Source of the DNA: Schmidtea nova
Lineage: Eukaryota
DNA length: 64,000 nucleotides
Direction: 5' to 3'
NCBI GenBank assembly: GCA_044892505.1
Contig: CM097882.1
Coordinates: forward strand, 438,898,001 to 438,962,000
Shown: positions 523-48,778 of the stretch, piece after piece
How the letters are laid out: each line of letters begins with the position of its first letter
Position numbering within the stretch: the stretch's first letter is position 1
The notes under the pieces: model-generated
What the model was told of the DNA's origin: nothing
The model's input: only the letters and a program-made list of their open reading frames with translations
Database searches by the model: none
Position numbers and translations under genes: made by a program

Positions 523-1343
523 CAGACAGATATCCACAATAGACCTAACATGGTATCTATAACTACGAACTTGCACTTAGAATGACCACATCATCCACAT
601 TCAAACCATCCTTCTAAAATTTAAAGCAAACGCGTTGTCATAAATCACTAAACTTATACTCAAATCTAATCACAAGCACTATTATAAATTTACGAGAGAA
701 AAAGTAAAAAATAAAAAGGGGAAAAATTTATTAAATAACAACTTAAAATGAAATAAGAATAAACTAAATATAATGTACTAACAATAGAGATGGTTTGTTT
801 TAGAAGTTTCTTGTAATTAGATCCAAAAAAAGTATAAATTCCAACAATTATCGATCGTGGGAAATCTTCGGGAACCAATGTGTAGGATCATTTTCCAAGA
901 AAGAAGTACCGAGTTCTCGGTGCTGGAGTCTGAGACAGATTGCTTCATCATTTGAATATTTGGAACGGAGATATATTTCAATGGTGTAATCCAAATTTGC
1001 TAATGATGGTTAAGTCGTATTATGACAAGAGAAAAGAGAAATTTCTTTTTATTCACATAATCATGAAATAGGCAGTTATAGAAAAAATTATTTTGAAAAG
1101 CCACGAAATGACATTGTTGATTGAATTGAAATTCTATCGCCACTTCTATTAACTGCATTTCGAATTCTCTTCAATTTTTCTTTTGCATAAAATTTTCGAA
1201 CAATATATTTCGAGATCTACTATCTTTTGGTGGAAGATCTTCACCCTGGTAATTTCCCTCGACTCGTAAACTTGATAGTGAGGCTTAAGTCCTGAAAATG
1301 TTGTTATATAAACGAAATAGAATAAATTACCAGTGTATTCAGT

Positions 1344-2347
1344 TGTTGGATGACGAGGGAAGACGCATAGAAGCATTCAAAGTCAATAAATATTATCATA
1401 TTGGCAACAATAGATACCGAATAAATATATATCTAGAAAAGTAACCCCCGATCAAATCTCAGCTATCTCAATCTCAATCATTCAAAGTATCAATTGTCCG
1501 TCCCAATCGTTCGAAATCACTTTCAAAAGTAACTCTCTAAAACTCTGATCAATCATTAACTATTGTCTGTCATCAATCAAACTCAAAACCTGTCTAATCC
1601 TTCATTTGTGATCATCAATTAAATCATTGTCTAACAATTTACAACCCTATCTTTGTGATCATCATCTGACTAATTAGTGAATTTTATTTTATCCCCACAA
1701 ACAATCAAAACTGTTATTTTATTAAATTATGAAAAATTTTGTAGTTTAAAACTTTATTTTATTATTAGTTAGATTTTATTATTTTTTATTATTGTAAAAA
1801 ATTTTTTATTTTATTATTAGTTAAAATTTATTATTGTTCATGTGAATGTCGCAAAACAAAATTTATTAAATGTCGTGGCATAAATCGATTTAATTTTCCA
1901 AGTGAAAGGAATTTACTGTAAATAAAACAATTTTAATAAATGTCAGCACAAATTTCAAATTTTCCAGGTGAAAGGAATTTACTGTAAATAAAACAATTTT
2001 AAATGTCAGCACAAATTTCAGTATATAAGGCAATGACAATTTAGTCAAATTGCCATAAAATCAAAGGTAAAATTTTGCGGTTAAATTTTGCTCTCTCAGG
2101 TACAAATCATGTAGAGCTTTTAAAATCGACCGGTTGGTCAAAAACATATAAAATTTAAAACTTGTTGAAGTTAAATTGAAGGTGTGAAAGTATAGAATAT
2201 CTATTTGTACACAATTATCGGTAATAATTTTGTTAATCTTGTTATTAAATAAATCTTATTAACAAACGTTTATTGTCTTAGTTTATTTATATAGGAACCA
2301 CCAACCCCCAGTTGAGATTTCAAATACACATATTTGAGACCTCAACA
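1344..2347 (+). repeat. 5' LTR (1004 bp)
   Basis: Starts TGTTGGATG, ends CTCAACA; no difference from the 3' LTR seen by eye; ~65-bp tandem duplication (1892-2020) just before TATATAA (2022-2028). Confidence 0.97.
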
Positions 2348-2349
2348 TT

Positions 2350-2367
2350 TGGTGCCGTGAACCGGGA
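2350..2367 (+). promoter_or_regulatory. Primer-binding site, tRNA-His type
   Basis: TGGTGCCGTGA 2 nt after the LTR, complementary to the ...UCACGGCACCA 3' end of eukaryotic tRNA-His(GUG). Confidence 0.85.
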
Positions 2368-2597
2368 CAATAAAATATTATAATATCAATCGGGGGATAG
2401 GAATTGCGATCAGAGGGATAGTGTAATATATTTTGGGAAATATATCTATATTTAAATATTAATTGACCAAAATTAAACTGAAATTAAAGATATAAACACA
2501 TAAGGTTAACAATAACAAAATAGGTAGAAAGATTAAGAAAGTCGATATAAAATCACCTGAAATATTGCACAATTTAAGAAAAAAAGTAATCTACAAG

Positions 2598-3798
2598 ATG
2601 AGTAATAACAGTACAAGTAGCAGCAATAGTGGAAATAACAGTAATACAGAAAACACCAACAGTAATCATAATTTTATAAAACATTACCAATAGAATCATA
2701 TAAAGGAGACCCTGAAAAGTTCGACGACTTTTTTGCCGAAATCGCACAATATGCAGAGGCTTGCGGATGGACAACAAATGAATTAAAACAACGAATCCCA
2801 TTATATTTAAAGAGATATGCGTTACAGGTATATAATAATTTAGCATGCAAAGGCATCAATTATAATGAATTAGTAAAAAACCTTAGAAAAGAAATAGTAA
2901 TAGATCGAGATTTGCAAAAAATAAATGTAGAAGTAGATACCAAGGAGCCAGAGAATCAGTAGGTGAATATATATACACGATAACAGAATTAGCAAAAAAG
3001 GCATTTGGTGCAGGAGATCACACTAGTGAATTAATTGAGGATCAGTTTTGGAACAGAATCCAAAAATATTTATACAAAGCATTAATTACAATTGAGTATG
3101 AAGACTTAAATGAGTTAGTTCATAAAGCAAAACGTATTGAAGCAATACAAAGAGATAGATTTAAACCAGAGATAGATGCTGTAGAAATTGAAAGACAACC
3201 TGAGGTAAAGCCTGAGTTGAGAAATAAAGATGATAGCATCCCTTGGGAAAAAATGAAACAATTATATTTGAATTTTGTTAATAATAGACGAAGAGTTAGT
3301 CCAAGTAGAAGCCAATCACCTGAAAAAAGGGGAAGGTTTAACAGTCCAGGAAATAAAAATTTCGATAATAGAAATAATTTTAAAGATAGTTATAAAAGAA
3401 ATAATAATAGAGATAGTTTTAGAGACAATCGTTTTGATAATGATAGAGACAACATAGACACTTTTAGACATAGTCGTTCTAGTTATAACAGAAACAGTTA
3501 CAATGGATACAATAGAAATAATAGAGATAATCGCTTTGAATATAATAGAAGAGATAATAGATATAGAGATAATTCGAGAAATAGACAGGATAGCCCGGTA
3601 AGGCGAAATATGTATAATAATGATGGTAGAGATAAAGTAAATTTTAATGGACAAATAAAATGTTATAATTGCCAGAGGTATGGGCACTTAGCAAAAGTAT
3701 GCAATAAACCACGAGCTGATTCACCAATTGGAGTAAGATTTAAAAATGAGCCTGAGATAAAACAGGTAAATAGTGCTGAGCTTGAGATAAAGAGATAA
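2598..3798 (+). pseudogene. gag: Gag with RN-rich low-complexity region and CCHC zinc knuckle, frameshifted
   Basis: CYNCQRYGHLAKVC at 3661-3702; capsid-like segment FFAEIAQYAEACGW...IPLYLKRYALQVY; several single-base shifts. Confidence 0.85.
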
Positions 3799-4232
3799 AA
3801 TAATTTAAGATAAATAATTTAAGAGAAGAATTAAAAGAATTTAAAATTCAATATGGAAGACTCATTGAGAGAAAACTTGAAATGTCTATAAATGAATTTA
3901 ACACTTTTACAAATGAGGTAGATATTTATAATGATGAGTTAAAAGAAATTAGAGAAGCAGATGAAATATTTCTTACAGAAGAAAATAGACAAAAAGAATT
4001 AATAGAGGAATTTAAAGAGGTATTGTATAAGCAACCATTTGATGACAATGAAACATTATGAGTAAATAATAAAATACAGGTTAATGTGCATGATTTAAAG
4101 AAGCTTAGAAATTTAATACCAATGATGGTAAAGAGACAAAATGTAACGAGAGTATTTGAATTAGAAATAGAAATAAAAGAGATGTTGAAATGTTATGGAG
4201 AATATATAAGAAAAAATGAAAAATTGCATGAA

Positions 4233-4470
4233 ACACTAAATGTAACGATTGAATCAAATGATAATTATTTTTTAGTATTAAACAAAATTTGCATCCTTGC
4301 ACTAAAGTGAGTAAATTAAAACGAATGGCAAGAGCCAAATGGCCAGGAACCATAGGAAAGAGAGATGTAATAAAATTATATTTTAATGGAATAGAACTAT
4401 TGAATGACGAATATTTAATTGACTATGGGATAAACCCAGTAAGTGATAATATTGTGATAGCTAGTATAGA
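4233..4470 (+). CDS. Ubiquitin-like domain without di-Gly, inside the retroelement polyprotein (one frameshift near 4290)
   Basis: TKVSKLKRM...KLYFNGIELLNDEYLIDYGI aligns by eye with ubiquitin TIENVKAKI...[20 protein letters not shown]. Confidence 0.7.
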
Positions 4471-4705
4471 AAAGCAAAGGATAAATGAAATAATGACACC
4501 AGCACCGTCAGTTGAATTGAGTATAAATGAGGAAAATGATTTTGACAGGTTATTCAGAACATGGGATAAATCACCTAGTGAAACAATGAAATCGATAACG
4601 GGGGAAGAAATTATATTTAAACCTATAGATGATAAATATAGTAAACTACAAGAAACAATAGAAAGAATAGCTGACGAAGCAAAAACGAAAGATGCAGAAA
4701 CATCA

Positions 4706-4732
4706 AAGCGAGGTAGAGGAAGACCTCGAAAA
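4706..4732 (+). CDS. AT-hook motif
   Basis: KRGRGRPRK contains the canonical RGRP core with basic flanks. Confidence 0.8.
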
Positions 4733-4839
4733 TCAGAAATTATAGAAAAATCAGAGAATAGAAAGACAGCAGAACGATTAAGAGAGATTGCAAATCAACA
4801 AAGACATGAACAATCAGAGTATCAAGATGATAGTAATGA

Positions 4840-5200
4840 CGTAAACAAAATAAAAGAAGTAATAAAAGCAATGAATATTAAGCTATTTCCAGAAACAAAG
4901 CCAACAGTACTAATTAAAAATATAACTGAAAGGATGATGTTAATTAAAAAGGATACTAAAGAACTAGCCACAGAGGAGGCAAATGAAAAAACAATATTAA
5001 AAATCCTGTTTAATACAGGGATAGATAAAGATAAAATAATAACGGCCAAGGCATACTTGGCCGCAAGATATAAAAAGCTCATAAAGGAAAATCCAAAAGA
5101 GCAATTAGAAAAAGTAGCAACAATGATGTTTAAAAGATTGAAAGTAGAGGCAATACCATGGATAAAAAAGAAAGGAGGATGGAAAGTATTATATGATAAA
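4840..5200 (+). CDS. Bcl-2-like domain
   Basis: BH2-like PWIKKKGGW (W codon at 5159; cf. Bcl-xL PWIQENGGW) about 35 aa after degenerate BH1-like ILFNTGIDKDKII (cf. LFRDGVNWGRIV). Confidence 0.7.
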
Positions 5201-5280
5201 AATACGACGAATAAAGAGAGTGATACAGATGAGGTAATAAAACAATTAATAAAGAAAGCAACAGTAAAACCAAAGACAGA

Positions 5281-7140
5281 GAGTAAATCGATAACCTCCA
5301 TAGTAATAGTCATAATCACTTTGTTATTAGATTTAATCAAGGGGGGGGGCAATGCAATGGTAGCATATGATTGTCAAAATCCAAAGTGGGGACAAAAATA
5401 CTCGCTGTTAGATGTTGAAAATTGCCCTGAAGCAAATCCAACTAAATTAATCATGTCAGAGCCTCAAATATTCCATGTTTATCAAGAATCAGACTTTATT
5501 CATACGGAGGCTAAAGAGTGTATAGTAAAGTACCAGGAGGAAGCATATATATGTCATGCTGGGGCAAGAACAGTGTTAAAACCTACGTGGACACCCGAAG
5601 CAGTAATATTGTCGCCAATAGAGTGTGAAGATGCATTCAAAACAAATAAAGTAAAATATAGCGGTCATAAAGAAATCGAACTAGAAGCAAGGATAGGAGC
5701 AAAAATGAGACAAGATGTAAATGTCGTGGGATGGACATCAAAAGGTGGATATTGTGAAAGAGGGAGAATATACAATATAGGGTGAAAAACTGAGTAATGT
5801 TGTAGTAAGGAGACACTACATGGTAGAACTGAGAAAGTTCAAAGCATCATTCGACAGCAGCTCAAAGAAAATGATGATATACAAATTTTGTACATTAGAA
5901 GAATCTTATTGCGATACAGGAGAATCAATGCTAATATACAAAATAGATAAATACGATTGCCAGTTAACAAAATTAAAATCATTAAAGTTTAGGGAAATCA
6001 AAGGAAAACAGTTCACAGAAGTAGACTCAAAAAGAGTGAGAGATCAAAAAAGGAAAACAACAATTGTACAAGAAAAAGATACACCAACAATATATATGTC
6101 AGAATCTGAAAACGAAGCAATGAGGTTCGTTAGTAAAAGGAAAAGTGTAAAATGTGGTAAGGAAATAATACAAACTAATTATGAAGGGATATACATAAGT
6201 AAAGAAGAAGTCAAAGATGCAAAACAAAAAGTAAATTAATTCGACGTCAAACTTGCATCATATTTCAACAATAAAATCGATTTTTTCTATAATAATCAAC
6301 TAGTACAATTAGATAAAGTATATCAATCAACAATTATGAGCGATTGCAAACTCAACAGAGAAATATTAAGGACAAAAATGGCAGTCGCGGTAACAAACCC
6401 AGATTTAATGGCACCAATAATCTTCTCAGAAGAAGGAACATTTGCAAGGATAGTAGGAGAAGTGATACAGACATTTCAATGTAAACCTGTTAGTGTATCA
6501 TTAGCAACAAACAATCAGTGCACAAAAGAGCTACCAGTAATATATAATGGAGAAAAGGTATACCTTCAACCAATTACTAGAATACTAACAGAAAAAACAT
6601 ATATACCGAGAAAAATAGAAAAATGCACTAACTTATTAGACCCATTATACAAAATAAATGACGAAATGTGGATATCTATGTCAGATAGAAAGGAGGCAAT
6701 GAAACCCCTCAAATTAGAACTCATAAAGTTAGAAAAAAGATTAGAGTTTAAAGAAATCAACGATATGGACAGCAATGGTATATATACAAGAGAAGCTATA
6801 GAAAGTGCAAGAAAACACATGCTATTTCCAAACGAAAAAGAAAGAGTACTGTCAATAATGGTGAACAGAGTTATCGAAGGAAGTTACGGAGGAAATTACA
6901 ACTTTGATGTAAGAGTAGAAAGTAGCATATAAAGTACTATATAGCATATGGGGATATTTTGCAGTCCTTGGAAACATGTTTTCTACAATCTTAGGTATAT
7001 ATTATACGGTTGCATTACTAAAAATGATATGTTCTTCTCTAGTATCACTGAGACAGCTAAAACAAGTATTTGGAAATTCATATAAATTATTAGCATGTTT
7101 GTGCCCATTTATAGCTAAATATCTTAAATCGGCGAAACAC
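5281..7140 (+). pseudogene. env: Envelope glycoprotein, chuvirus/herpes-gB (class III)-like; disrupted by frameshifts and in-frame stops
   Basis: Hydrophobic SITSIVIVIITLLLDLI then AYDC...YSLLDVENC; GEVIQTFQCKPVSV, CTKELPVIY...YLQPITRIL, GIYT...LFPNE; TM WGYFAVLGNMFSTILGIYYTVALLKMI. Confidence 0.85.
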
Positions 7141-7439
7141 GACAAGGAAATACGTTTAATAAAAGTCCAAAGGAATGAAGAAAGGCAATTATTGGTAGAT
7201 GATGAAAACGATGAGGAAATAATTAAAGCACATATATCACATGAAGGAAATGTACCACAACAAGGACTATATGAAAACCAAAGAGAACAACTAAAAGAGC
7301 TACAAGAAAATATAGAAATCAAAATTCCTAGAGAAAACAAGAATTGTCACTGTGAACCTAAAAAGATATATGGTTGTTATAGCTTAGAAGTCGAAACAAT
7401 GGAACGATTAGATGCAGCAAACGAAGCAAGACCAAGACT

Positions 7440-10400
7440 TAAAATAATTATAAACAATATAATCATAAATGCATTAGTAGATACAGGAGCAGCAACATCC
7501 TTAATTAGAGAAGATCAACTGACAGATGATCAAAAAAGAAATATTATGAGCACAACGGATAAAGTAGTATCGCTATCAGCACATTGTATTCCACTAAAGG
7601 GAGACATAGAACTAATAGTCGAAACACTAGAACAGGTAATAAACCACATATTTAAAGTGGTACAAGAATGTTATAGCATATATATATTGGGAATCGATAT
7701 ACTCAACAAGTTAGAAAACTGCATCATAGATTTAACAGATAATACGATAAAGAGAAAAGCAATTAAACATAAATCCAAGTTCACAGAAGTTGTTGCATTA
7801 GAAGCATTTGAATTGGAATATGAATGCGATCATATAATTCCCTTAAAAGTTAACATCAAAAGTGAGGACACTTTTATTTTTGAGCCAGAAACGGCAATTA
7901 TACAAAATCAGAATATAATGCTAACCAATGAATGCGTAATTCCGAGAAAGGGAATAATACCATTGAGAATAGCAAATTATGAAAAAAGTAATGTTAAAAT
8001 ACACAAAGGTACGAAATTGGGAAAATTATTCAAAGGTGAATTAGAGAAAACGTACGAAGTCAGTGAGACAAGCGTGATGAATGATAACGACAAGGGAGTA
8101 GTCGAACCTAGTAAGATAAATAATATAAAATCATATGACAAAGTAAAAATTAATAATAAATACTTAACAATAACACAACAAACACAACTACAAACATTGA
8201 TAGATAAATATAGTGATGTTTTTGCAAAACACGAATTTGATCTAGGAGATACCGATATAATCAAACATGTAATAGATACAGGTAATGCTAGACCAATAAA
8301 ACAAAGACCATACAGCGTACCATATAAGTTAAGAGAGGAAATAAAACGACAAATCAAAGAACTAAACGATGCAGGTGTAATAAAACAGAGTTTTTCACAG
8401 TGGGCATCACCCATTGTACCCGTTAAAAAGAAAGATGGAGAAATAAGAATGTGCATTGACTATCGCAAATTAAATGATGTAACAGTAAAAGACTCATACC
8501 CATTCCCAAAAGCACAAGAGCAATACGATAAACTTAGGGATGCTAAGTATTTTTCAGTCATTGATGCCAATAAAGGGTATATGCAAATTCAAATGGAAGA
8601 AGGAGATGCGGAAAAAACAGCATTTGTTATTGAGGATGGTTTATATGAGTACACACGACTACCTTTTGGGTTAACTAACGCACCAGCTACATTTCAGCGT
8701 TTAATGAACACAATATTAGTAAATGTACAACACTGCGCAGTTTACATGGATGATATACTAATATCATCAAAAACATTTGAGGAACATTTAAAAGATATAA
8801 CAAACGTACTTGAGAGACAAAGAAAAGCAAGGATAAAAATTAAACCAACCAAATGTAAATGGGCAGAACCATCAGCATTATTTTTAGGGCATATAGTTAC
8901 AGTTGAAGGGATAAAACCAAATCCAGAAAAAATAAAAGTTGTAAACAAATTCCCGATACCAAAAACAGTGCAACAAGTACAAGGGTTTTTAGGTTTAACA
9001 AGCTATTACCGTAAATTCATACAAGATTATGCAAAGATAGCATCACCTATAATAGAACTAACAAAAGGAATTAAAACAAAAGGAGAATGCAAAGATGTGT
9101 TAATAGTACAAGAAATTAACAATAAAGTTAACAAGATACAAAAGAAGTGGACAAAGGAACATCAAGAACATCATTCGATAAACTAAAAGAAAGATTGATA
9201 ACAGCACCAGTGTTAAGGTACCCAGATTTCGAAAAACAATTTATAGTAATGACGGATGCCAGCGGGAAAGCCGTAGGAGCAGTCTTAGGTCAAGAGGAAG
9301 AGAAAGGGAAAGATTACGTAATAACATATGCTAGTAAAACATTAAAAGGAGCACAGCTGAGGTATTCAACAATAGAGAAAGAATGTTACGCAATAGAATT
9401 TGCCCTAAAACAATTCAAACCATACATATATGGAACTGAAGTAATAATAAGAACGGACCATAAACCATTAGAAGGCTTATGGAAACATAAGGATACATCA
9501 AGTAGACTACTAAAATGGGCAATGAAAATACAAGATATGCACTTGAAAATTATATATAAACCAGGTAGAATAAACAAAAACGCAGATGCACTGTCAAGAA
9601 TACCAGAATTAGGAGCACTTGAAATATTTGCACTAGTAGCAGAAAAGCCAATCGATATATATGAGTAACAGATGAAAGACCTAGAAATCAGCAAAATAAG
9701 AAATGAAATCAGAAAAGAAAGTAATTCAAAGTATAAAATATCAAAGAGATTAGTAGTAATAGAGGATTTCAGTGGTAAACAATTAATAGTAGTACCTCAA
9801 AAATTAAGACAAATACTTCTATTACAATATCACGATGGAGCATTAGGAGGTCACTTATCATCTAGAAAAACAGCAAGTAGATTATTACAAAAATATTACT
9901 GGAAGAGTTAAAGAAAGATGTTAAGAGATGGTGTAACGCGTGTACAATATGTGCAACAAGAAAAAATACAGGCACAAAAACAAAAGCGCCGTTACACCCT
10001 ATTCCAGCAACAACATCACCAATGGAACTATGTGCAATGGACTTCCTATGTAAATTACCTACTACAATTAATGGGAATAAACATATACTAGTATTTAGTG
10101 ATTATTTTACTAGATGGGCGGAAGCATTCCCAACAAAAGATGAAACAGCAGAAACTGTTGCTAAATTACTCATAGAAAAAATAATTTTTAAGATAGGTAC
10201 ACCTAAAAGATTATTAACAGATAAAGGAACAAATTTTACTAGCGAATTAATAAAAAGGGTAGCTAGCATTTTTAACATGCAAAAGATCAACACAACAGCG
10301 TATCACCCTCAAACTGATGGGCTAGTAGAAAGGTTTAACGGGACATTATTAAGCAGACTAGCGGTCTTTGTAGGCAAAAATCAAAATGATTGGGACGAAT

Positions 10401-10900
10401 ACGTAAGTCAATGCACATACATCCATAATATCACTCCAAATGAAACAACAGGGTATTCACCGTATTACTTAATGTTCTTAAGAGAACTAGCAACACCAAT
10501 AGATACAATTTTTGAACCTCGAGTATCACAATATTTAGACGCACCAGATTATGTCACACTAATGCAGGAAAAACTGCAAGAAGTGTATAAAGTAGCTAAT
10601 TTAAAAGTCAAATTTAGACAAGAACAGTACAAAGCCGACTATGACAAAAATAGTAAACCACATAACTTTAAAGTAGGTGATAAGGTTAGACTTATGTCAC
10701 CACATGTAGGAAAAGGAAAAACAACAAAGTTAGCAAGACCATATAAAGGTCCATACGAAGTAGTAAAAGTAATAAATGAGAATCTACACCTACAAAAGCA
10801 CAAAAATGAGGATCCAATAGTAGTACATGTTAACAGATGCAAGTTAGCAGAGGCAGAGGTCACGATAGATAAACCTCACAAGTATAATCTTAGGTCTCAT
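7440..10900 (+). pseudogene. pol: Pol: aspartic protease, RT, RNase H, integrase
   Basis: LVDTGA (7480), MCIDYRKLN, YMDD (8743), TDAS...YSTIEKECYA, HHCC (9831-9952), D..D..E, GPY and YNLRS; frameshifts near 9170 and 9905, TAA at 9666. Confidence 0.97.
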
Positions 10901-10903
10901 AAC

Positions 10904-11688
10904 AAGCTAATAATATCGGCTATCTTCTTAACAATCATAACAGTTGTTGGTTCAACCAAAACATTAGAATTTGACAAATTATTAATAAAAATATCAACAA
11001 ACGAAGTGAGGGTATTTATCATAAACACGGGAGTAATCGACATATACATGCAAACACCAGATAAAGAAAATCCAAAGATGATAAAAAGAAAAGAGGACAG
11101 TACAACCAAGGAAATCGAAAGAGGAAACTATGTTAACTTCACAAAACTAACACCTAATACAATATACAGAATCTGCATACAGAGAGACACAGATACAACA
11201 ATATGGAGATGCAAGAGAATAAAAACAGAACAGAATAAAAAACAAAGATCCAAGCATAACAAAAACGACGACAATAACACCAGATAGAACAGAAAGCACA
11301 AGAACAAAGACAACGACAACAAACAATATATTAAATATCACTGCACATATAGACAAAATACCAACAAACACTAGAATAACAAAATTCCAAAAACAACAAC
11401 AAAAACAAAAACATATCAAAATAAAACAAGGAAAACCAATAGTTACATAACTTAGAGGAACTACAAGCATTTCAAAAAAGGGATAAAAAGCCACATTGGC
11501 CATATTATGTAATCACAGCATCGATAATAACATTAGCAGTCTTAGCTTTAGTAACTAGCACACAAATATACAAAAAGTACAAATGGAAAAGGCAGCGGTA
11601 TTGGAGCCGACTGGTCAAAGATGTACCAGGACATTTCCATTTTGATAAATACATACCTGGCATATACACAATATCAACACAAGTATGA
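10904..11688 (+). pseudogene. Type I membrane module fused after integrase: signal peptide, FN3-like domain, Thr-rich stalk, TM, tail ending STQV
   Basis: LIISAIFLTIITVVGS is in frame with integrase; FN3 signature FTKLTPNTIYRICI; after frameshifts TKTTTITPDRTESTRTKTTTT, TM YYVITASIITLAVLALVTS, KKYKWKRQR, TGA at 11686-11688. Confidence 0.7.
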
Positions 11689-11809
11689 TGCAAACTGGTC
11701 AATAATATTTATTAAAATTATATATATGTATATCTATATTTTGGTGTATGAGGGAAAACCAGCATTACACTTCAAATTTAAAATTGATTATTTAATTTGT
11801 AGAAAGAAA

Positions 11810-13669
11810 ATGTACAATAGCAATCAACCCGACAGACAATCAAATAGACAATTCAATCAGCACCCAAACAAACAATTCAAACAACACAACCAACCCAATC
11901 GTCAACACCCATACAAACAAAGTCAATCCCACAGTCAATCGTTCGAAAAGTACGATTAAATGTTCAAACAAAACGAGCAACCCGCATCTTATCAAAAATA
12001 CACCTGTTTTATAAACAAACTGGGAAACAGTTTTTATAAAAATAGCCAAAACAAAATCAGTACAGACGGACAACCCATCACCATAAGAAATTTCCCTAAC
12101 CAAGTCTGCACACCCAACGAAACGAAGATAGACATCGAAGAGAGAGAACTGAGCATAATCAAATTTAATGATGCTCGAAGAGTCAAACTCCGAGAACTCA
12201 TTGGGAGTTTCGACCAATATAAAAATGTGGATAAAGCGGTGGTAGAAGGTAAAAAAGTACCTCACCAGTTAACATTCCACATCACAAAAACCGAGGTATC
12301 GATTTGCCAAAACAAAATCCCACTTATGACAACAAGCAATTGCTCGCTCGTAATCAAATTAATCAGAAAAGACAGGAGCATGAGTAACGATTTTAACGAG
12401 TTACTAATACAAATGAATAGCCTACCCTGCGTTATTGCGATAGAAATAATTTATATTCCAACAATGCCAAATCCGTTCAGGCAACTAGAGAGCATTCCAT
12501 CATCTATCAAATTAACAGAAGATCTAATAAAAAGAAGAATCTCATTCACCCAACAAGAACTGTCTATGGAAGAAAGGCATGAATTAATAGTGTTTCTGGA
12601 TATCAAGTTAATAACGGACATCAACGGAAACCAAAGGCCAGTAGAAATCAGCATAAGAGACGATCAGGGCAGTACAATATATGATAAAAAGATAACCCCA
12701 AGATCAATGATCAGAGATTTCAAAATTGAAAGAACCAGAGCAACTAAAGAAAACATTATAGGAAACGAGGATGAATATCAGGCATTAAATGATGTCAGAA
12801 GCATATTATATGGAAAAATAATAATAGGATTCGGAATAATGGATAAACTCAAAACACTGGCAATGAAAATCAATTATGTCATGGGGATCCGAGAGATGGA
12901 AGAAGATCAGTTCATGTGCACATTCGTGAAGAATGTAGAACCGCACAAAATTAAACTATCCAACTTGGCATACCAAGTTGTAAGTCATCATAAACGATGG
13001 TTCAAGGACAAGAGGGTAAACGAATTATTAAGAAGACCAGAACCATTTTCAGGATCAGAAACCACCAAATTGGTCAAAATAATATACATGATAACAGAAA
13101 CCCAATGGGAAGAGGTAATTAAATGGAACCAAAGAAGATTCCAAGAAGAGATGGATCCAAGAAATAGAGCAAACATAGAAAATAAAGGACAATCCAATAA
13201 CGATAACAACTGGGAAAGTGAATCAGAAGGAGAGGAGGAAGAAATTCTACAAACATCTACAGAAGAATCAACAGCTAGTGACGATGACTTTATTTTCATC
13301 AGCGAAACAAGAACAACCAACATGGAAATGAGGGAAACAAAAAGAGAACCAGTCGTACGACAGGAAAAAATGGAGGAATGTGACCTGGATCCAGAAGAGG
13401 AATATTTTTCACTTGAAGAAGAAGTAGAAATGGATCAGATACCGAGTACAAGTTATCAAGAAACCGATATAGGGTCAGAACCCGAGATCGAAATATTGCC
13501 GGAAGAACTCACAACCACAGAAAAGGATACCTGCGTTGGAAAACAATTCAGGAAGGACCTTTTAACATTCAGAAAAGAACAGAGGAAGACAATCATCCAA
13601 GTGAAAGAAAAAGAAATCGAACTCGTCATATCAGATAAAGGTAATGAGGGCATTACCTTGACGGCCTAG
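11810..13669 (+). CDS. Accessory 3' ORF: Q/N-rich N-terminus, REX4/ISG20-like DEDD exonuclease fold with degenerate active site, acidic C-terminus
   Basis: ATG 11810 in frame with 11960 across one TAA (11957-11959); IVFLDIK...EISIRDDQGSTIYDKKITP...ILYGKIIIGFGIMD...IKLSNLA at 12587-13092. Confidence 0.7.
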
Positions 13670-13676
13670 GGAGGTA
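13668..13676 (+). promoter_or_regulatory. Polypurine tract
   Basis: AGGGAGGTA immediately before the 3' LTR. Confidence 0.8.
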
Positions 13677-14680
13677 TGTTGGATGACGAGGGAAGACGCA
13701 TAGAAGCATTCAAAGTCAATAAATATTATCATATTGGCAACAATAGATACCGAATAAATATATATCTAGAAAAGTAACCCCCGATCAAATCTCAGCTATC
13801 TCAATCTCAATCATTCAAAGTATCAATTGTCCGTCCCAATCGTTCGAAATCACTTTCAAAAGTAACTCTCTAAAACTCTGATCAATCATTAACTATTGTC
13901 TGTCATCAATCAAACTCAAAACCTGTCTAATCCTTCATTTGTGATCATCAATTAAATCATTGTCTAACAATTTACAACCCTATCTTTGTGATCATCATCT
14001 GACTAATTAGTGAATTTTATTTTATCCCCACAAACAATCAAAACTGTTATTTTATTAAATTATGAAAAATTTTGTAGTTTAAAACTTTATTTTATTATTA
14101 GTTAGATTTTATTATTTTTTATTATTGTAAAAAATTTTTTATTTTATTATTAGTTAAAATTTATTATTGTTCATGTGAATGTCGCAAAACAAAATTTATT
14201 AAATGTCGTGGCATAAATCGATTTAATTTTCCAAGTGAAAGGAATTTACTGTAAATAAAACAATTTTAATAAATGTCAGCACAAATTTCAAATTTTCCAG
14301 GTGAAAGGAATTTACTGTAAATAAAACAATTTTAAATGTCAGCACAAATTTCAGTATATAAGGCAATGACAATTTAGTCAAATTGCCATAAAATCAAAGG
14401 TAAAATTTTGCGGTTAAATTTTGCTCTCTCAGGTACAAATCATGTAGAGCTTTTAAAATCGACCGGTTGGTCAAAAACATATAAAATTTAAAACTTGTTG
14501 AAGTTAAATTGAAGGTGTGAAAGTATAGAATATCTATTTGTACACAATTATCGGTAATAATTTTGTTAATCTTGTTATTAAATAAATCTTATTAACAAAC
14601 GTTTATTGTCTTAGTTTATTTATATAGGAACCACCAACCCCCAGTTGAGATTTCAAATACACATATTTGAGACCTCAACA
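13677..14680 (+). repeat. 3' LTR (1004 bp)
   Basis: Same length and apparent sequence as 1344-2347. Confidence 0.97.
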
Positions 14681-14972
14681 CAGTTGATTTGAGGGAAATC
14701 TTCTTCCTAAAAATAACATTTAAAATCGATAGTTATAATAAGGAATTTAAATTGTCATAATAGAAATTACCCAATAGGAATTAATGCATCTTGCTTACCC
14801 ATCTATATAGAATTTCTTTCGATCGGGGGAACATGGATATCCTTGACGGGAAGAGGTAGGAATTTTATTCTATAGGTGAGATATAATTTAAGATGCTAAA
14901 TGTTGACAAAAATTTGTAAAAAAATCTTAAAAATTTTTTAATATAAAGTTAGTAACAAATTATGTAATTACT

Positions 14973-23717: not shown

Positions 23718-25698
23718 ATGGAAAGCAACAATTTATCTAACTACGAAAACGAAACCAAAAAGACATTATGGGACTTCTTTTTGCGTAAAGGAAACGATGC
23801 CGCGAAATGCAAGAATTGTAATAAAACTTTAAAATCCGTAGGAGGTTCTACCAGTGGACTACACTATCATCTTAGAAGTCAGCATCAAATTAATTTACTA
23901 AAGCGAGATAAACCAGACCCTTCTACGCAATTCTCTCAAAATAAAAGCGACTGCGCTGTGAGCACTTCAAAGGGTGGTATTATGAATTATTTCAGAAACG
24001 TAGTTGATGATACTCTTCCTGCAGTGATTTCTAGGATGGTAGCAAGGGATGGGTTACCTTTTGAAAAGTTTTGTACCTCTTGTGATTTGAGAAAATTATT
24101 AATTGCAAAAGGATATGATGTCCCAAAATCAGCAAATTCAATCAGAAAAATTGTAATGGATTACGGAGAAAAAATTAGGAATGAAGTACGTGGAGAAATT
24201 TCAAATCATAGCAAAAATGGAAGCAAGTTTAGCCTCACGTTTGATGAATGGACATCCATCAAAAACCATCGTTACATGAATGTAAATGTCCATGTTGAAA
24301 AACTGTTTTGGAATTTAGGCTTAACGCGGTTGCAAGGATCGATGCCTGCAGAAAAATGTTGTGAAACTCTGGAAAAAAAACTTCAGGAATTTGGACTAAA
24401 TTTTAATAGCGTCGTAGCGATAACTACAGATGGGGCAGCAGTAATGAAGAAGGTTGGTGTAGTTTTAAATATACATCATCAGCTATGTTATGCGCATGGA
24501 ATCCAGCTCGCGGTGGTTAAAGTTTTTTTACAAAAGAAAAAGTGAAATAATTGAATTAGCAGAAGAACCAAGTAGTTCCATAGAAGATACCGAAGATTAT
24601 TATGATGAAGATGATGATCTTAATGAAAATTTGATTATAGTAGTAACGGATGATCCAATAGTTCAATGTGATATCTCCCATGAAGAATTATTTCCTATTA
24701 TAAACAAAATACGAAGAGTAGTGAAAATATTTCGAAAGTCACCTACTAAAAATGATGACACTCTTCAAAAGCATGTCATCAATGAATTTGGATCTGAAAT
24801 TTCTTTAATATTGGATAGTAAAACCCGATGGAACAGCTTATTAGCTATGCTGGAACGTTTCTTCAAATTAAAATCCGCTGTGAGAAAAAGTTTAATCGAC
24901 TTGAATGTTGATATCAATTTTTCAGAAAATGAATTAAACTTGGTTAATGAAATGATAAATGCATTGGAACCAATAAAATTGGCAGTTGAATCTCTAGGCT
25001 CCTCAGATTTTACATTATTAAGTGCTGATGTAACACTCAAATTTATGCTTGATGAATTATATGAACAGAATACTGTTCTAAGCAGAGAACTTCAACGTGA
25101 ATTAATCCTTCGAATCGAAGAACGTAGAACAAATTACTCAGATGTGCTTCAGTTCTTACAAAATCCTTTAGAATATGAAATATCAAAGGATAACACAAAT
25201 TATGGATTATTTAATAAACTAAATAAAAGCGCAATAGTCAAAACTATTGTTTCAATTATTGAGCGCTTGGTAATAAATATTGATATAAATAATGAAACAG
25301 AAACTGAATCACCTGAAGATGAGACAATAAATTTGTCCGTAACCGTACCACAACAGTTGACAATGAAAGAACGGTTAAAAATCGCCATTCAAAGGAAAAA
25401 TGAAGTTAATTTTGACACTTTGGCTACTTCACCAATTAAAAACAAAAAGAAAATAGAGAATATCATCAAAAAGGAAATGAATTCTATTGCGGAGGAAAAA
25501 CGCCTTGGAACATATTTGGAATTAGCACAAAAATATTTGCATACAATAAAACCAACGAGTGTGGAGTCAGAAAGAGCCTTTTCTGCTACAGGAAAATTGT
25601 GTACGAAGATTAGATCAAATCTTAATGATCAAACAATAGATACAATTTGTATTTTACGTGGATATTTTGGTAAGCAGAAACATTTAGTTGGTACTTGA
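23718..25698 (+). CDS. hAT transposase with BED zinc finger; one +1 frameshift in a T7 run near 24525
   Basis: WDFF..KCKNC..TSGLHYHL..QH; FDEWTS, TTDGA, CYAH, TRWNS, SVESERAFS. Confidence 0.95.
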
Positions 25699-29017: not shown

Positions 29018-29646
29018 CAAGGATGGTGTTATAATGCACGCACAAGACTTTTTAAGATTCAAAATATATTTATTATACAATGATTAGATATTAAAACAAA
29101 ATACTAAAACGATGATTAACACGATTATTGTTAATCATCATTGACAATATTATGATATCCTTTCATCAACAGCACCCACATCTATGTTTCGATCGATGTC
29201 TCCTACTGCGTCTAATGTCGGATTCGGCTGGTTTTTTCTCTTGCGTAAGTTGTGTGTCTTTGACTTCCTGGATCTGCCGGCGATCTGAGATTTGGTTATT
29301 GCTAACCAATGTCACATTGTCGTTCTGACTCTCGATAGTGATGTATGAAGTGTTGTTGCTCTTAGTCATGATAAATTCGTCCTCTTTTGGTTCCACGTCC
29401 TCACTGGCTTTGTACCAGATGTCCTGGCCTTGTTGAAATTTAGACATTATCGGAGCTCTAGGCTGTCGCCCGAAAATAATCTCTGCGGGTGATTTCCTCT
29501 TCGATGTCGATGAAATTCTGTGGTGGAATAGGATTTTCTTTAGGAAGGTATTGAAATCACAATGTGTCAGAAGCTCGTTCCATCCTTTGAGAGCTTTCTT
29601 GACAGTTTGTACAGCCCTTTCTGTCGATCCGTTTGATCTAGGGAAG

Positions 29647-31178
29647 TGTTGGGCCAGGCAAATCAACAAGAATCTGAAAGAAAAGTGAAATCAATAAATA
29701 ACATAAAAATAACAACCAAATAAAATTACTAAGCATGCAGCAATATGCAGTAGAAGCCGAAAGCACTGAAACATAAATCAAAATAGATAATAACAATAGA
29801 AACTCACCCATGCGAAATATCGATAGCTCAAAATCTGACAAGGCGTAGGCAGATATCACCGAAAGTCTACAAGAAAACAAATATTAACAAAAAATTTACG
29901 GATGATTGAACAACAACTTACCGAATTAGGTATATAGTCGATTATAGTCGATATAGTCGATTTCCTCTAAATAACTGAAGCATTGTCATAATGGATTACC
30001 TGTGTTTCATAGTTAATAAAGAAATGTTTTATCGATTGTGTTATTACTTGAATACATGTGGTAATAATGGGTGATGTCATCAGATTGATAAGGGATCCTT
30101 AGGGTAGAACCCAGATACCGATGATTGATAACGATGATAGTACATAAGGGGGGAATTGAGCGAGATGTGTGGAACCATGGAGGCAGAGAACATACTAATC
30201 CACCCACTTTTCATTTAGATGTATGCAGTAAAGAATCGTGACTACCGGGAAGAGGCAAGGGAATCTCGGAAGCGAGCCAAGGCCCTCGAAGGTCGGCTAA
30301 GACAGTTGGATACCGAGTTTCAGCTAATAAAGACGACTTGGTTCGATCCGGAACGAGTAAAAAGCATCCAACAAGCCAGATACCAGGCTGAAAGAGCAGC
30401 AGAAGAACAGGCGCGAGAAACAGCAGCGGTCAAGTTAGAGCTGAGCAACTACTTGTGGGCCTCTACTAAAGATTTCATTGAGCAACAGTTGAGACCGCTT
30501 ATCCGAACTAGTACCTTCGATCGATGGGTGCAGACTACTAGCGTCTCCATGGGCGTGCAAACTGATATGAACTTAAACCTGAGTTCAGACTCTCCGGAAA
30601 ACATTCAGAAATCAGAAGGATCTAAGCGTACCAAAAGAAGGAATCGACTGGGTGCTAAAAGGCGTCGAGAAAGAAGGGCTTATGCAGAACGAATTGGATC
30701 GAAGTAGATCTTTTGAGTGAATTAACGGAAAATCAACTGCTGGCCGTCATTAATTCTACTGTGTTGTTGAATTAAATAAATGTATTATAGTTAAAGTGTA
30801 TCTTTAGGAATGAATGTGGAATGAATGAGGATTTAAATAAACGAATGATTGAGTATATCTAAATCATTAATGCCAAAGGACATGAGGAATCTAAATCAAC
30901 CCTAGACATAATGAATTTAAATGAATGTGAGGGGACCGGAGAAAAACCACGCAAACCTTCTATCGGTAGTGGCGGACCCGTGAATAAATAAGGGAATAGT
31001 AGCCACAAGGTTGCTCACCTGCCTTATCATTTCACAACGTTGATACAGTTCCAACATGATGAGTAGTTAGGGATACATCATGGGTATCAGCGGGGAAAAC
31101 GTTTTATGTTGGCGGGATCACCCTAACCAATAATATCAAGCATGATCTCTGTTGAAACATCCGACCATCAAACCAGCA
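29647..31178 (+). mobile_element. Solo LTR (1532 bp) containing an ORF
   Basis: TGTTGG...CCAGCA ends; 4-bp TSD GAAG; removal restores integrase KSPAY-FPRSNGSTERAV. Confidence 0.88.
30219..30707 (+). CDS. Coiled-coil protein with basic C-terminus, inside the solo LTR
   Basis: 162-aa ORF, homologous to 47497-48096 (LKTTWF.PE.VK.IQQ.RY, RETAAVKLELSNYL, KRRNRLGAKRRRERRAYAE). Confidence 0.7.
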   Translation: MYAVKNRDYREEARESRKRAKALEGRLRQLDTEFQLIKTTWFDPERVKSIQQARYQAERAAEEQARETAAVKLELSNYLWASTKDFIEQQLRPLIRTSTFDRWVQTTSVSMGVQTDMNLNLSSDSPENIQKSEGSKRTKRRNRLGAKRRRERRAYAERIGSK

Positions 31179-34100: not shown

Positions 34101-34308
34101 TCTCGCTGAACGTCATCTCCTCTAGCAATTTGGGAGAAGCCATATCTTGGATTTTCGTGAGTGCCTTCAGTCCACATACAGATATGAAGTTGTCCATGAC
34201 TTGTCTTGATTTGTCACTGTCGACCCACTTATTGGCTCGACTCATCGCACCGAAAGCGGTTAACCATATTTCGACATTGATGTTGTAATCTAGGGTCAAT
34301 TCTTCCAA

Positions 34309-34319
34309 TCGTGACGCCA
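34309..34319 (-). promoter_or_regulatory. PBS, tRNA-Ser(CGA)-like, overlapping the gag ATG
   Basis: TGGCGTCACGA 1 nt after the LTR; A+TGG forms ATG GCG TCA CGA (MASR). Confidence 0.75.
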
Positions 34320-35223: not shown

Positions 35224-35263
<40 letters not shown>

Positions 35264-35693: not shown

Positions 35694-35780
<87 letters not shown>

Positions 35781-48760: not shown

Positions 48761-48778
48761 TGATGTCAGTAGTAGGAT
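48761..48778 (+). promoter_or_regulatory. Degenerate PBS, tRNA-Leu type, overlapping an in-frame ATG (48760)
   Basis: TGATGTCAGTAGTAGGAT matches the tRNA-Leu(CAA) PBS TGGTGTCAGAAGTGGGAT at 15 of 18 positions. Confidence 0.65.

What the first reader, a model, noticed from the sequence alone, without database searches (positions are those of the whole stretch)
2598..13669. Virus-like Gypsy element with cargo on both sides of Pol: Gag-Ubl-AThook-Bcl2-Env-PR-RT-RH-IN-FN3-TM plus a pseudo-exonuclease ORF
Seen: one LTR-bounded, TSD-flanked unit holds, in order, the Gag knuckle, a ubiquitin-like fold, an AT-hook, a Bcl-2-like domain, a class III-type glycoprotein, Pol, a second membrane protein and an exonuclease-like ORF. 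Known: env-bearing Metaviridae are normally gag-pol-env with env as a separate 3' ORF, and carry few accessory genes. Inference: this is an enveloped retroelement with large-DNA-virus-style host-manipulation modules (apoptosis, ubiquitin, surface receptor, RNA decay). The alternating hydrophobic segments give a self-consistent topology, cytosol-lumen-cytosol-lumen-cytosol, as in flavivirus or alphavirus polyproteins. I do not know of this combination being described.
Basis: partly seen in the sequence, partly recalled or inferred. Interest (0 to 1): 0.96.

Follow-up and report, generated by a model that had tools for sequence, protein, structure and literature searches.

The report
Env-bearing Gypsy element with Bcl-2-like cargo
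This is a very recently inserted but coding-broken copy of a giant virus-like LTR retroelement whose single polyprotein carries, besides Gag and Pol, a negative-strand-RNA-virus-type fusion glycoprotein, a Bcl-2-like domain, a ubiquitin-like domain and an AT-hook, followed by a degenerate ISG20-like exonuclease gene. Relatives in other assemblies share these modules, and I found no description of the accessory set for retroelements.

Summary
Window 1344-14680 is a 13,337-bp Ty3/gypsy-type LTR element with 1004-bp LTRs that are 100% identical, TG..CA ends and a 4-bp target duplication.

The order gag(CCHC) – Ubl-like – AT-hook – Bcl-2-like – TM – G (Pfam PF24664, E 1e-38) – PR – RT – RNase H – IN – TM–X–TM, plus a separate 569-aa 3' ORF, is real.

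The modules are lineage features, not local insertions. Seven contigs from four other assemblies share subsets in the same order. Several encode them as uninterrupted polyproteins of 2296-3243 aa.

- **Bcl-2-like:** family profile against PDB gives E 7e-6; all top fold hits are Bcl-xL or Bcl-2.
- **3' ORF:** homologous to ISG20/RNase_T exonucleases, but its catalytic residues are replaced.
- **Ubl:** supported weakly.
- **FN3:** not confirmed.

This copy is broken: 8 frame changes and 4 in-frame stops from gag to IN, and more after IN. It is not one ORF.

Env between gag and pol is already published for nematodes, bryozoans and flatworms. I found no description of the accessory set. Functions are inferred only. 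Verdict: a new variant of a known kind; interest 0.7.

The parts
1340..1343 (+). Target-site duplication, left copy (CAGT)
   Evidence: Same 4 bases directly flank both LTRs.
1344..2347 (+). 5' LTR, 1004 bp, TGTTG...CAACA
   Evidence: 100% identical to 13677-14680.
2350..2367 (+). Primer-binding-like site starting TGG, 2 nt after the LTR
   Evidence: Read from the sequence. The tRNA was not identified: the window has no tRNA gene.
2598..11959 (+). Polyprotein coding region from gag to the post-IN membrane module. Broken in this copy: 8 frame changes and 4 in-frame stops from the gag ATG to the IN core, and at least 2 more breaks after IN.
   Evidence: Break counts. Natural relatives encode the same order as uninterrupted ORFs of 2296-3243 aa. 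Collinear tblastn of those relatives covers 2684-10903.
2598..3702 (+). gag, from the ATG through the capsid-like part and a disordered Arg/Asn-rich stretch to the CCHC knuckle at 3661-3702. Broken by 2 frame changes.
   Evidence: zf-CCHC E 1.4e-4. Translations. Homology to the gag part of P0124 and P0126.
4236..4480 (+). Ubiquitin-like domain with no C-terminal Gly-Gly. One frame change lies inside it.
   Evidence: Pfam ubiquitin E 0.061 and Rad60-SLD E 0.066 on the window piece. Relative L002: ubiquitin E 0.0034. A profile of three natural copies hits only ubiquitin, ISG15 and NEDD8 in PDB.
4709..4732 (+). AT-hook (RGRGRPRK)
   Evidence: Translation. The same [RK]GRP[RK] motif sits at the matching place in P0124, L002 and P0126. 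Pfam AT_hook in L002.
4736..5200 (+). Bcl-2-like helical domain (BH1-like at 5006, BH2-like at 5156-5182)
   Evidence: Pfam Bcl-2 E 9.6e-6 at 26.5 bits, below the 31.4 cut-off. Family profile against PDB: 123 hits, best E 7.4e-6; the 60 listed are all Bcl-xL/Bcl-2-type. AF2 model with pLDDT 60; the Foldseek top 50 are all Bcl-xL, Bcl-2 or poxvirus Bcl-2. Viral library top hits are viral Bcl-2 homologues.
5291..5347 (+). Hydrophobic segment 1: tail anchor of the Bcl-2-like domain and, by position, the signal or anchor for G
   Evidence: Kyte-Doolittle 2.1. Conserved in 8 relatives. It lies in the same uninterrupted stretch as the Bcl-2-like domain and the start of G.
5351..7227 (+). Fusion glycoprotein G of the Monjiviricetes type, with its own TM at 6976-7044. 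Broken by 2 frame changes and 1 in-frame stop.
   Evidence: PF24664 matches cover profile positions 20-158, 337-509 and 551-638 of 653, with E 8e-11, 1e-38 and 3e-8. Collinear with uninterrupted G of P0125, P0129 and P0130. TM.
7423..10861 (+). Pol, broken by 2 frame changes and 2 in-frame stops. Domains: PR 7423-7716, RT 8422-8898, RNase H 9165-9536, IN zinc domain 9792-9905, IN core 10028-10309.
   Evidence: Pfam RVP, RVT_1, RT_RNaseH, Integrase_H2C2 and rve. tblastn of complete Pol proteins gives outer bounds 7471-10861. The G tail, PR and RT lie in one uninterrupted stretch.
10907..11956 (+). Post-integrase membrane module: TM 10907-10963, a domain with a faint fn3 hint at 11123-11182, a second TM 11690-11746, and a short tail. 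Broken at least twice.
   Evidence: TM segments. fn3 E 0.12 only. No PDB match. TM, then 236-332 aa, then TM after IN recurs in P0130, P0132, P0166 and the L003 Pol. No sequence similarity to those relatives.
11960..13669 (+). 3' ORF, 569 aa, open from ATG to stop: an ISG20/RNase_T-type (DEDDh) exonuclease homologue with replaced catalytic residues, plus an acidic C-terminal part
   Evidence: PDB ISG20 E 0.016 alone. Family profile: ISG20L2 E 1.8e-4, ISG20 E 5.9e-4. BLASTP E 3e-9 to the L001 ORF, which matches Pfam RNase_T at E 3.3e-10. Motif comparison. Homologues P0121 and P0122.
13668..13674 (+). Short purine tract (AGGGAGG) ending 2 nt before the 3' LTR
   Evidence: Read from the sequence.
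13677..14680 (+). 3' LTR
14681..14684 (+). Target-site duplication, right copy (CAGT)

Best explanation
Window 1344-14680 is one copy of a lineage of giant, env-bearing Ty3/gypsy-type retroelements.

**Shown.** The element has LTRs, a target duplication, and gag and Pol in gypsy order. A G glycoprotein of the negative-strand-RNA-virus type sits between gag and PR. Ubl-like, AT-hook and Bcl-2-like modules lie between gag and G. A membrane module follows IN. A separate 3' ORF derives from an ISG20/RNase_T-type exonuclease. In natural relatives everything from gag to the post-IN module is one uninterrupted polyprotein.

**Inferred mechanism.**
- The genomic RNA is translated into one polyprotein that is threaded through the ER membrane by four hydrophobic segments. 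Gag, Ubl, AT-hook and Bcl-2-like would lie in the cytosol, the G ectodomain in the lumen, PR-RT-RH-IN in the cytosol, the post-IN domain in the lumen, and the tail in the cytosol.
- Signal peptidase would cut after the first segment. This would leave the Bcl-2-like domain as a tail-anchored protein and free the N-terminus of G.
- The element's protease would cut the cytosolic junctions.
- Pol would reach assembly sites tethered to the tail of G rather than as a Gag-Pol fusion.
- The Bcl-2-like domain would keep the producing cell alive.
- The Ubl fused behind gag would recruit budding or sorting machinery.
- The AT-hook would bind AT-rich DNA.
- The catalytically dead exonuclease homologue would act as an RNA-binding or decoy protein.

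**This copy.** It cannot make the polyprotein, with at least 14 breaks. Because its LTRs are identical, the breaks either predate insertion (a defective template copied with proteins supplied by other copies) or are partly assembly errors.
For: **Element structure:**

**Domain order in the window:**

**Direct fusions within uninterrupted stretches of this copy:**
- Bcl-2-like, TM and the start of G.
- G tail, PR and RT.
- IN core, TM and the extra domain.

**Lineage character:**
- An exhaustive search found 50 relatives.
- P0124, P0125, P0127, P0129, P0137, P0144 and P0169 join a Bcl-2-like part to G.
- P0126, P0130, P0132 and P0166 are uninterrupted polyproteins of 2296-3243 aa with G-PR-RT-RH-IN plus 600-1150 aa.
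- The loci come from four assemblies.
- L002 has Ubl and an AT-hook upstream of Bcl-2-like and G.
- L001, L003 and L006 carry the exonuclease-like ORF.
- The window's RT clusters with the G-bearing relatives in a neighbour-joining tree of 99 RTs, without bootstrap.

**Module identities:** Bcl-2; exonuclease; Ubl; AT-hook.

**Topology in relatives:**

**Break counts:**

**Age argument (inference):** four nonsense changes acquired in place would imply about 1% substitution. That rate would give roughly 20 differences between the LTRs; none is seen.
Against: - No expression, processing or particle data exist; every function is inferred from homology.
- The Bcl-2 Pfam score is below the curated cut-off (26.5 against 31.4 bits). 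Foldseek E-values are 0.1-0.6 on a model with pLDDT 60.
- Ubl support is weak, with single-domain E-values of 0.01-0.2.
- The post-IN domain has no confirmed fold and no sequence similarity to relatives.
- The class III fold of G rests on Pfam family membership and was not modelled here.
- No relative contig holds both LTRs, so the full layout from LTR to LTR is seen only in this broken copy.
- The host species is unknown.
- The cargo is not uniform: P0132 and P0166 showed no detectable Bcl-2-like part.
Confidence: 0.8

Rival explanations
1. The frame changes and stops are mostly assembly errors (indels at homopolymers in a long-read assembly of an AT-rich genome). On this reading the real copy is an open, possibly active element.
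For: The LTRs are identical over 1004 bp although the coding region has at least 14 breaks. Frame changes outnumber in-frame stops 8 to 4. Three of 7 shift zones hold a homopolymer of 6 or more, against 0.8 expected. Systematic homopolymer errors would be repeated in both LTRs and so would not break their identity (inference).
Against: Four in-frame stops are not the usual long-read error. The 1.7-kb 3' ORF is fully open. Defective copies mobilised by proteins from other copies are common among LTR elements (general knowledge). No read data are at hand.
Confidence: 0.3
2. The accessory modules are passengers without function: captured host fragments carried along neutrally.
For: The exonuclease homologue has lost its catalytic residues in five of six members. 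Cargo differs between relatives: ankyrin repeats occur in L002 and L006, and no Bcl-2-like part was found in P0132 or P0166. The post-IN domain evolves too fast for sequence matching.
Against: Bcl-2-like BH1/BH2-type positions, the tail anchor, the AT-hook and the Ubl pattern persist at 20-35% identity across contigs from different assemblies, in the same order and in frame with essential genes. The dead exonuclease ORF stays open and 41-50% identical in P0121 and P0122.
Confidence: 0.15
3. The region is a mosaic. On this reading an endogenous fragment of a negative-strand RNA virus and host genes (Bcl-2, ubiquitin, ISG20-like) lie nested by chance or mis-assembly inside an ordinary Gypsy element.
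For: Endogenous mononegavirus G fragments are common in invertebrate genomes (general knowledge). The window is dense with transposons.
Against: The modules are fused in frame within uninterrupted stretches of this copy. The same order recurs in seven independent contigs, several as one ORF of up to 3243 aa. One target duplication and one LTR pair bound the whole.
Confidence: 0.03

Closest known systems
GAG-ENV-POL Ty3/gypsy 'errantiviruses' with class III ENV of Nematoda, Bryozoa and Platyhelminthes (Chary & Hayashi, eLife 2026, PMC13524379)
   Same: A Ty3/gypsy backbone with a class III-type envelope gene placed between gag and pol, found with multiple recent copies in invertebrate genomes.
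   Different: That paper annotates GAG, ENV and POL only. The words Bcl and accessory do not occur in it. Its ENV is labelled HSV/gB-type, whereas the window's matches Pfam PF24664 (G of Monjiviricetes). The Ubl, AT-hook, Bcl-2-like, post-IN membrane module and exonuclease-like ORF are not described there. I could not test whether this lineage is among their elements, because the supplements are not held.
Nematode endogenous retroviruses with a captured RNA-virus glycoprotein (Sacco et al., J Gen Virol 2022; cited in PMC13524379; not in the library)
   Same: By its title and the citing text, a metavirus that captured an RNA-virus glycoprotein and carries env before pol. From my memory of the abstract, which I could not verify, gag-env-pro-pol is one continuous ORF and the glycoprotein resembles those of Nyamiviridae/Chuviridae. 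That would match the architecture seen here.
   Different: The host of the window is unknown. I recall no Bcl-2-like, Ubl or ISG20-like modules being reported there, and I could not read the paper to check.
Juno and Vesta LTR retrotransposons of bdelloid rotifers with a DEDDy exonuclease ORF3 (Rodriguez, Kenefick & Arkhipova 2017, PMC5408684)
   Same: LTR retroelements that carry an extra 3' ORF of the DEDD exonuclease superfamily. Cargo is modular and varies between families.
   Different: Those are RNase D-like DEDDy enzymes with catalytic residues largely kept. The window's ORF is of the DEDDh ISG20/RNase_T type and has lost its catalytic residues.
Viral Bcl-2 homologues of large DNA viruses and adintoviruses
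   Same: A virus-like element encodes a Bcl-2-fold protein with a C-terminal anchor. Foldseek top hits in the viral library are adintovirus Bcl2, herpesvirus BALF1, poxvirus and ASFV Bcl-2 homologues.
   Different: Those are separate genes of DNA viruses. Here the domain is part of a retroelement polyprotein, and its anchor sits directly before the envelope protein. The E-values are weak (0.24 and above), so no specific kinship is shown.
Membrane-threaded polyproteins of flaviviruses and alphaviruses
   Same: The analogy covers only the alternation of cytosolic and luminal parts, set by internal hydrophobic segments.
   Different: There is no homology. Processing here is unobserved.

Membership tests
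Ty3/gypsy (Metaviridae) LTR retroelement | Paired LTRs with TG..CA ends and a short target-site duplication | tested here: met
   1004-bp identical LTRs, TGTTG..CAACA ends, 4-bp CAGT duplication.
Ty3/gypsy (Metaviridae) LTR retroelement | Pol order PR-RT-RNase H-IN, with integrase after RT | tested here: met
   Pfam domains in that order. Collinear with complete Ty3/gypsy Pol proteins.
Ty3/gypsy (Metaviridae) LTR retroelement | Gag with a CCHC zinc knuckle; primer-binding site and polypurine tract next to the LTRs | tested here: met
   zf-CCHC E 1.4e-4. TGG-starting site and purine tract. The priming tRNA was not identified.
Env-bearing GAG-ENV-POL gypsy elements | A viral fusion glycoprotein encoded between gag and pol | tested here: met
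   PF24664 at 5351-7227, between the knuckle (3661-3702) and PR (7423).
Env-bearing GAG-ENV-POL gypsy elements | Open reading frames for gag, env and pol | tested here: not met
   This copy has 8 frame changes and 4 in-frame stops from gag to IN. Natural relatives meet the feature.
Class III viral fusion proteins | The class III fold (elongated trimer with internal fusion loops) | not tested
   Only Pfam membership in a family of Monjiviricetes G proteins. No sequence match to a solved G.
Bcl-2 family | Sequence match to the BH1-BH2 region | tested here: inconclusive
   Pfam PF00452 E 9.6e-6 but 26.5 bits, below the 31.4 cut-off. Family profile against PDB E 7.4e-6, Bcl-xL/Bcl-2 only. A relative alone gives E 0.01.
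Bcl-2 family | Helical bundle fold with a C-terminal membrane anchor | tested here: met
   All-helical AF2 model with pLDDT 60. The Foldseek top 50 are all of the Bcl-2 family, with probability up to 0.99, TM-score 0.45-0.55 and E 0.13-0.6. A hydrophobic segment follows at 5291-5347. Confidence is moderate.
Bcl-2 family | Regulation of apoptosis through BH3-groove binding | not testable with these tools
   No functional data.
DEDDh exonucleases (RNase_T / ISG20 type) | Homology to the exonuclease domain | tested here: met
   Profile against PDB: ISG20L2 E 1.8e-4 and ISG20 E 5.9e-4. BLASTP E 3e-9 to the L001 ORF, which passes Pfam RNase_T at 41.2 bits against a cut-off of 24.
DEDDh exonucleases (RNase_T / ISG20 type) | Catalytic Asp-Glu-Asp-His-Asp residues in motifs I-III | tested here: not met
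   In the alignment of six natural members only the L001 ORF keeps them. The window has D-x-K in motif I, Gly in place of the motif II Asp, and Phe and Thr in place of the motif III His and Asp. It is therefore a homologue but not a working member.
Ubiquitin-like (beta-grasp) domains | Sequence match over the whole domain | tested here: inconclusive
   Window piece E 0.06. L002 E 0.0034. A three-member profile hits only ubiquitin, ISG15 and NEDD8: polyubiquitin 2.6e-5, single domains 0.014-0.2. No Gly-Gly end.
AT-hook | Arg-Gly-Arg-Pro core flanked by basic residues | tested here: met
   RGRGRPRK at 4709-4732, conserved in three relatives.
Fibronectin type III domain | Sequence or fold match | tested here: inconclusive
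   fn3 E 0.12 over 20 residues. No PDB match. No alignable relatives.

The most novel reading that the evidence does not exclude
This would be a widespread invertebrate lineage of enveloped retroelements that has assembled an accessory repertoire otherwise known from large DNA viruses and complex retroviruses. The repertoire comprises a tail-anchored Bcl-2 homologue whose anchor doubles as the signal for the envelope protein, a ubiquitin-like domain fused behind Gag, an AT-hook, a second membrane protein behind integrase, and a pseudo-enzyme derived from an antiviral-type ISG20 exonuclease. All but the last are translated as one membrane-threaded polyprotein in which Pol is tethered to Env rather than to Gag. 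It would be the first retroelement-encoded Bcl-2 homologue.
Probability: 0.45. Interest if true: 0.85.

Novelty: new variant of a known kind. Interest (0 to 1): 0.7.

Why it matters
Retroelements are usually thought to carry few accessory genes. Here a whole lineage keeps a cell-death regulator homologue, a ubiquitin-like domain, a DNA-binding hook and a dead copy of an antiviral-type nuclease in frame with its structural and replication genes.

If these modules work as their homology suggests, invertebrate env-bearing Gypsy elements manipulate their hosts much as large DNA viruses do. The Env-Pol fusion would also be a different way of delivering Pol to particles than the Gag-Pol route of retroviruses.

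The finding also flags a practical point. Such contigs sit mis-filed in metagenome bins; one relative is deposited as a Flavobacteriaceae contig.

Tried and rejected
- **Word-index protein search with the Ubl-to-G stretch:** no hit. The exhaustive search was needed.
- **Search with the RT stretch:** only ordinary Pol proteins at 36-50% identity, none listed with G.
- **Viral-contig scan with a G piece:** nothing.
- **Exact look-ups of eleven window ORFs to find the source genome:** none on record. The host remains unknown.
- **AF2 of the 3' ORF with 3 sequences:** pLDDT 32, unusable and not fold-searched.
- **Pfam on gag capsid pieces, the middle of G and small ORFs:** no hits.
- **FN3 tests:** inconclusive.
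- **tRNA scan and Rfam scan of the window:** nothing.
- **Bacterial promoter scan of the LTR:** uninformative.
- **Other copies in the window:** none.
- **LTR pairs in relative contigs:** none.
- **Literature:** a search for the nematode paper misfired on the word start 'nerv'. That paper is not held.
- **Mosaic or nested-insertion reading:** considered and rejected (see rivals).

1. After, in my reasoning, I recalled primer-binding-site and tRNA letters from memory, including those of a known retrovirus. The tRNA is left unnamed.
2. Around, in my reasoning, I went through the breaks together with ORF coordinates. No such list is in the notes, the script output or this report.

Full report
**1. 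The element**

A direct repeat search found one pair of repeats flanking the finding. Extending it base by base gives two 1004-bp LTRs, 1344-2347 and 13677-14680. They have no difference at all, and similarity drops to background outside them.

The LTRs begin TGTTG and end CAACA. The four bases CAGT stand directly outside both ends, forming a target-site duplication. A TGG-starting primer-binding-like site begins two bases after the 5' LTR. A short purine tract ends two bases before the 3' LTR.

The element is therefore 13,337 bp. Its coding strand is strongly A-rich (AT skew about +0.3), in a host background of 25-30% G+C. The window has no N. None of the fetched contigs looked human.

**2. 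What is encoded, in order**

Pfam scans of the open stretches of the + strand gave the following, from 5' to 3'.

- **Gag.** A CCHC zinc knuckle. A capsid-like part precedes the knuckle.
- **Bcl-2.** A match below Pfam's cut-off.
- **Glycoprotein.** A strong match to PF24664, the fusion glycoprotein family of Monjiviricetes. E-values are 8e-11, 1e-38 and 3e-8 over profile positions 20-158, 337-509 and 551-638 of 653.
- **Pol.** RVP, RVT_1, RT_RNaseH, Integrase_H2C2 and rve.
- **3' ORF.** A 569-aa ORF with no Pfam match.
- **AT-hook.** RGRGRPRK is plain in the translation.

Three fusions are seen directly inside uninterrupted stretches of this copy:

- the Bcl-2-like part, a hydrophobic segment and the first 150 residues of G;
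- the transmembrane tail of G, PR and RT;
- the IN core, a hydrophobic segment and about 110 further residues.

**3. The modules belong to a lineage**

The word-index search found nothing for the Ubl-to-G stretch. The exhaustive HMMER search found 50 relatives.

- **Bcl-2-like joined to G.** Seven relatives join the Bcl-2-like part, the anchor and G: P0124, P0125, P0127, P0129, P0137, P0144 and P0169.
- **Uninterrupted polyproteins.** Four relatives are uninterrupted polyproteins of 2296-3243 aa. P0130, P0132 and P0166 hold G, PR, RT, RNase H, IN and 600-1150 further residues. P0126 holds a CCHC knuckle, G and PR copies.
- **Source assemblies.** The contigs come from four assemblies: ERZ25039515, ERZ893782, ERZ5540424 and GCA_003506685.1, the last filed as a Flavobacteriaceae bin. 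JGI data add more.
- **Different hosts.** The contigs have 32-44% G+C. The three contigs compared at that point (L001-L003) share only 63-72% nucleotide identity with the window, in the best-conserved parts. They therefore come from other hosts.
- **Ubl and AT-hook.** In L002 the ORF upstream of Bcl-2-like and G carries a ubiquitin match (E 0.0034) and an AT-hook. The AT-hook recurs in P0124, L002 and P0126.
- **Exonuclease-like ORF.** L001, L003 and L006 carry one. In L001 it lies just after the polyprotein and passes Pfam RNase_T (E 3.3e-10).
- **RT tree.** In a neighbour-joining tree of 99 RT pieces, the window groups with four G-bearing relatives. The tree has no bootstrap and is indicative only.

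Cargo is not uniform. L002 and L006 have ankyrin repeats and several PR copies. P0132 and P0166 show no detectable Bcl-2-like part.

**4. Module identities**

*Bcl-2-like.*
- The window alone gives Pfam E 9.6e-6 at 26.5 bits, against a cut-off of 31.4. Against PDB it gives Bcl-xL at E 0.3.
- A profile of the window plus eight natural relatives gives 123 PDB hits, best E 7.4e-6; the 60 listed are all Bcl-xL, Bcl-2 or Bcl-2-homologue chains.
- A relative on its own also finds Bcl-xL, at E 0.01.
- The AF2 model has mean pLDDT 60 and 70-76 over the core. It is all-helical.
- Its 50 best Foldseek matches in PDB are all Bcl-xL, Bcl-2 or a poxvirus Bcl-2 homologue. Probabilities reach 0.99 but E-values are 0.13-0.6.
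- In the viral library the best matches are viral Bcl-2 homologues.

I take the fold and homology as supported and the function as open.

*Ubl.*
- The evidence is weak in the window (E 0.06).
- A three-member profile hits only ubiquitin, ISG15 and NEDD8.
- There is no Gly-Gly end.

*3' ORF.*
- ISG20 scores E 0.016 with the single sequence. With a three-member profile, ISG20L2 scores 1.8e-4 and ISG20 5.9e-4.
- BLASTP to the L001 ORF gives E 3e-9.
- In an alignment of six natural members, only L001 keeps the DEDDh catalytic residues. The window, P0121, P0122, L003 and L006 have replaced them.

*Post-IN module.*
- The fn3 hint is insignificant (E 0.12).
- PDB gives nothing.
- Relatives cannot be aligned to it.
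- The pattern of TM, then 236-332 residues, then TM behind IN recurs in four uninterrupted relatives. It matches the two hydrophobic segments of the window at 10907-10963 and 11690-11746.

**5. State of this copy**

From the gag ATG to the IN core there are 8 frame changes and 4 in-frame stops:

| Region | Frame changes | In-frame stops |
|---|---|---|
| gag | 2 | 0 |
| Stretch from the knuckle into the Ubl | 2 | 1 |
| G | 2 | 1 |
| Pol | 2 | 2 |

The post-IN part is broken at least twice more. The 3' ORF is open.

Breaks of this number cannot have arisen in place while 2 x 1004 bp of LTR stayed identical. This is an inference. There are two possible causes:
- The copy was made from an already defective template.
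- Some breaks are assembly errors. Three of seven shift zones hold a homopolymer of 6 or more, against 0.8 expected.

I cannot decide between these without reads.

**6. How it most likely works**

The mechanism is inferred. One polyprotein is threaded through the ER membrane by four hydrophobic segments. Signal peptidase frees G and leaves a tail-anchored Bcl-2-like protein. PR cuts the cytosolic junctions. Pol travels tethered to the tail of G.

The accessory parts are read by homology:
- The Bcl-2-like part supports cell survival.
- The Ubl supports sorting or budding.
- The AT-hook binds AT-rich DNA.
- The dead nuclease supports RNA binding or acts as a decoy.

It is borne out by uninterrupted relatives.

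**7. What is known**

Env between gag and pol, of class III type, is published for Ty3/gypsy elements of nematodes, bryozoans and flatworms (PMC13524379). That paper cites Sacco et al. 2022 for nematodes, which the library does not hold.

DEDD exonuclease ORF3s are published for rotifer LTR elements, but of the DEDDy type (PMC5408684).

The two retroelement papers I checked for these terms do not mention a Bcl-2-like or ubiquitin-like domain, and the errantivirus paper does not contain 'Bcl'. Three further searches found none.

This is therefore a new variant of a known kind. The caveat is that the library is incomplete.

**8. Slips**

Around I went through the breaks with coordinates. I stopped both times. 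None of it was used, noted or printed, and nothing was deleted.

Noticed in passing
window 11957-11962: The stop that ends the polyprotein frame is followed at once, in the same frame, by the ATG of the 3' ORF. In relatives the two ORFs are 49-224 nt apart. How the 3' ORF is expressed is unknown.
   Followed up: partly
window 23718-25698 (+): hAT-type DNA transposon: zf-BED, DUF659 and hAT dimerisation domain, split over two overlapping ORFs.
   Followed up: no
window 29027-34450 (-): A second, ordinary Gypsy element of about 5.4 kb with LTR pieces 96% identical, and with gag, RT and RNase H ORFs. It is older than the element under study.
   Followed up: partly
window 48619-54047 (+): A third LTR-bounded unit (repeats 96% identical) with DUF7041 and RT/IN similarity.
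   Followed up: no
window 40098-43363 (-): Gypsy RT/IN remnants in a stretch with strong negative AT skew.
   Followed up: no
window 56799-57914 (-) and L003 17240-18434 (-): ORFs with DUF7047 and RVT_3. The same pair of Pfam families lies next to the relative element in L003, from another host.
   Followed up: no
window 34996-35965: Tandem copies of a unit of about 500 bp, 98-100% identical.
   Followed up: no
L002 13210-14964; L006 12777-14612: Relatives carry ankyrin repeats (Ank_2, E about 1e-9) and two or three protease-like domains between G and RT, so cargo differs within the lineage.
   Followed up: partly
L005 (GCA_003506685.1, DNYW01000170.1): A 9-kb contig that is almost wholly a 2627-aa retroelement polyprotein is deposited as part of a Flavobacteriaceae metagenome bin. 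It is most likely a mis-binned eukaryotic contig.
   Followed up: no
P0121, P0122 (UniParc UPI00061083E2, UPI00060EC02B): The two closest homologues of the 3' ORF are chimeric gene models. One is fused to an acetyl-CoA carboxylase N-terminus and the other to a long unrelated tail. This points to element copies beside or inside host genes in another annotated genome.
   Followed up: partly
L006 1-2340: Here an exonuclease-like ORF lies upstream of a gag of the same family. This suggests two adjacent elements or another gene order.
   Followed up: no
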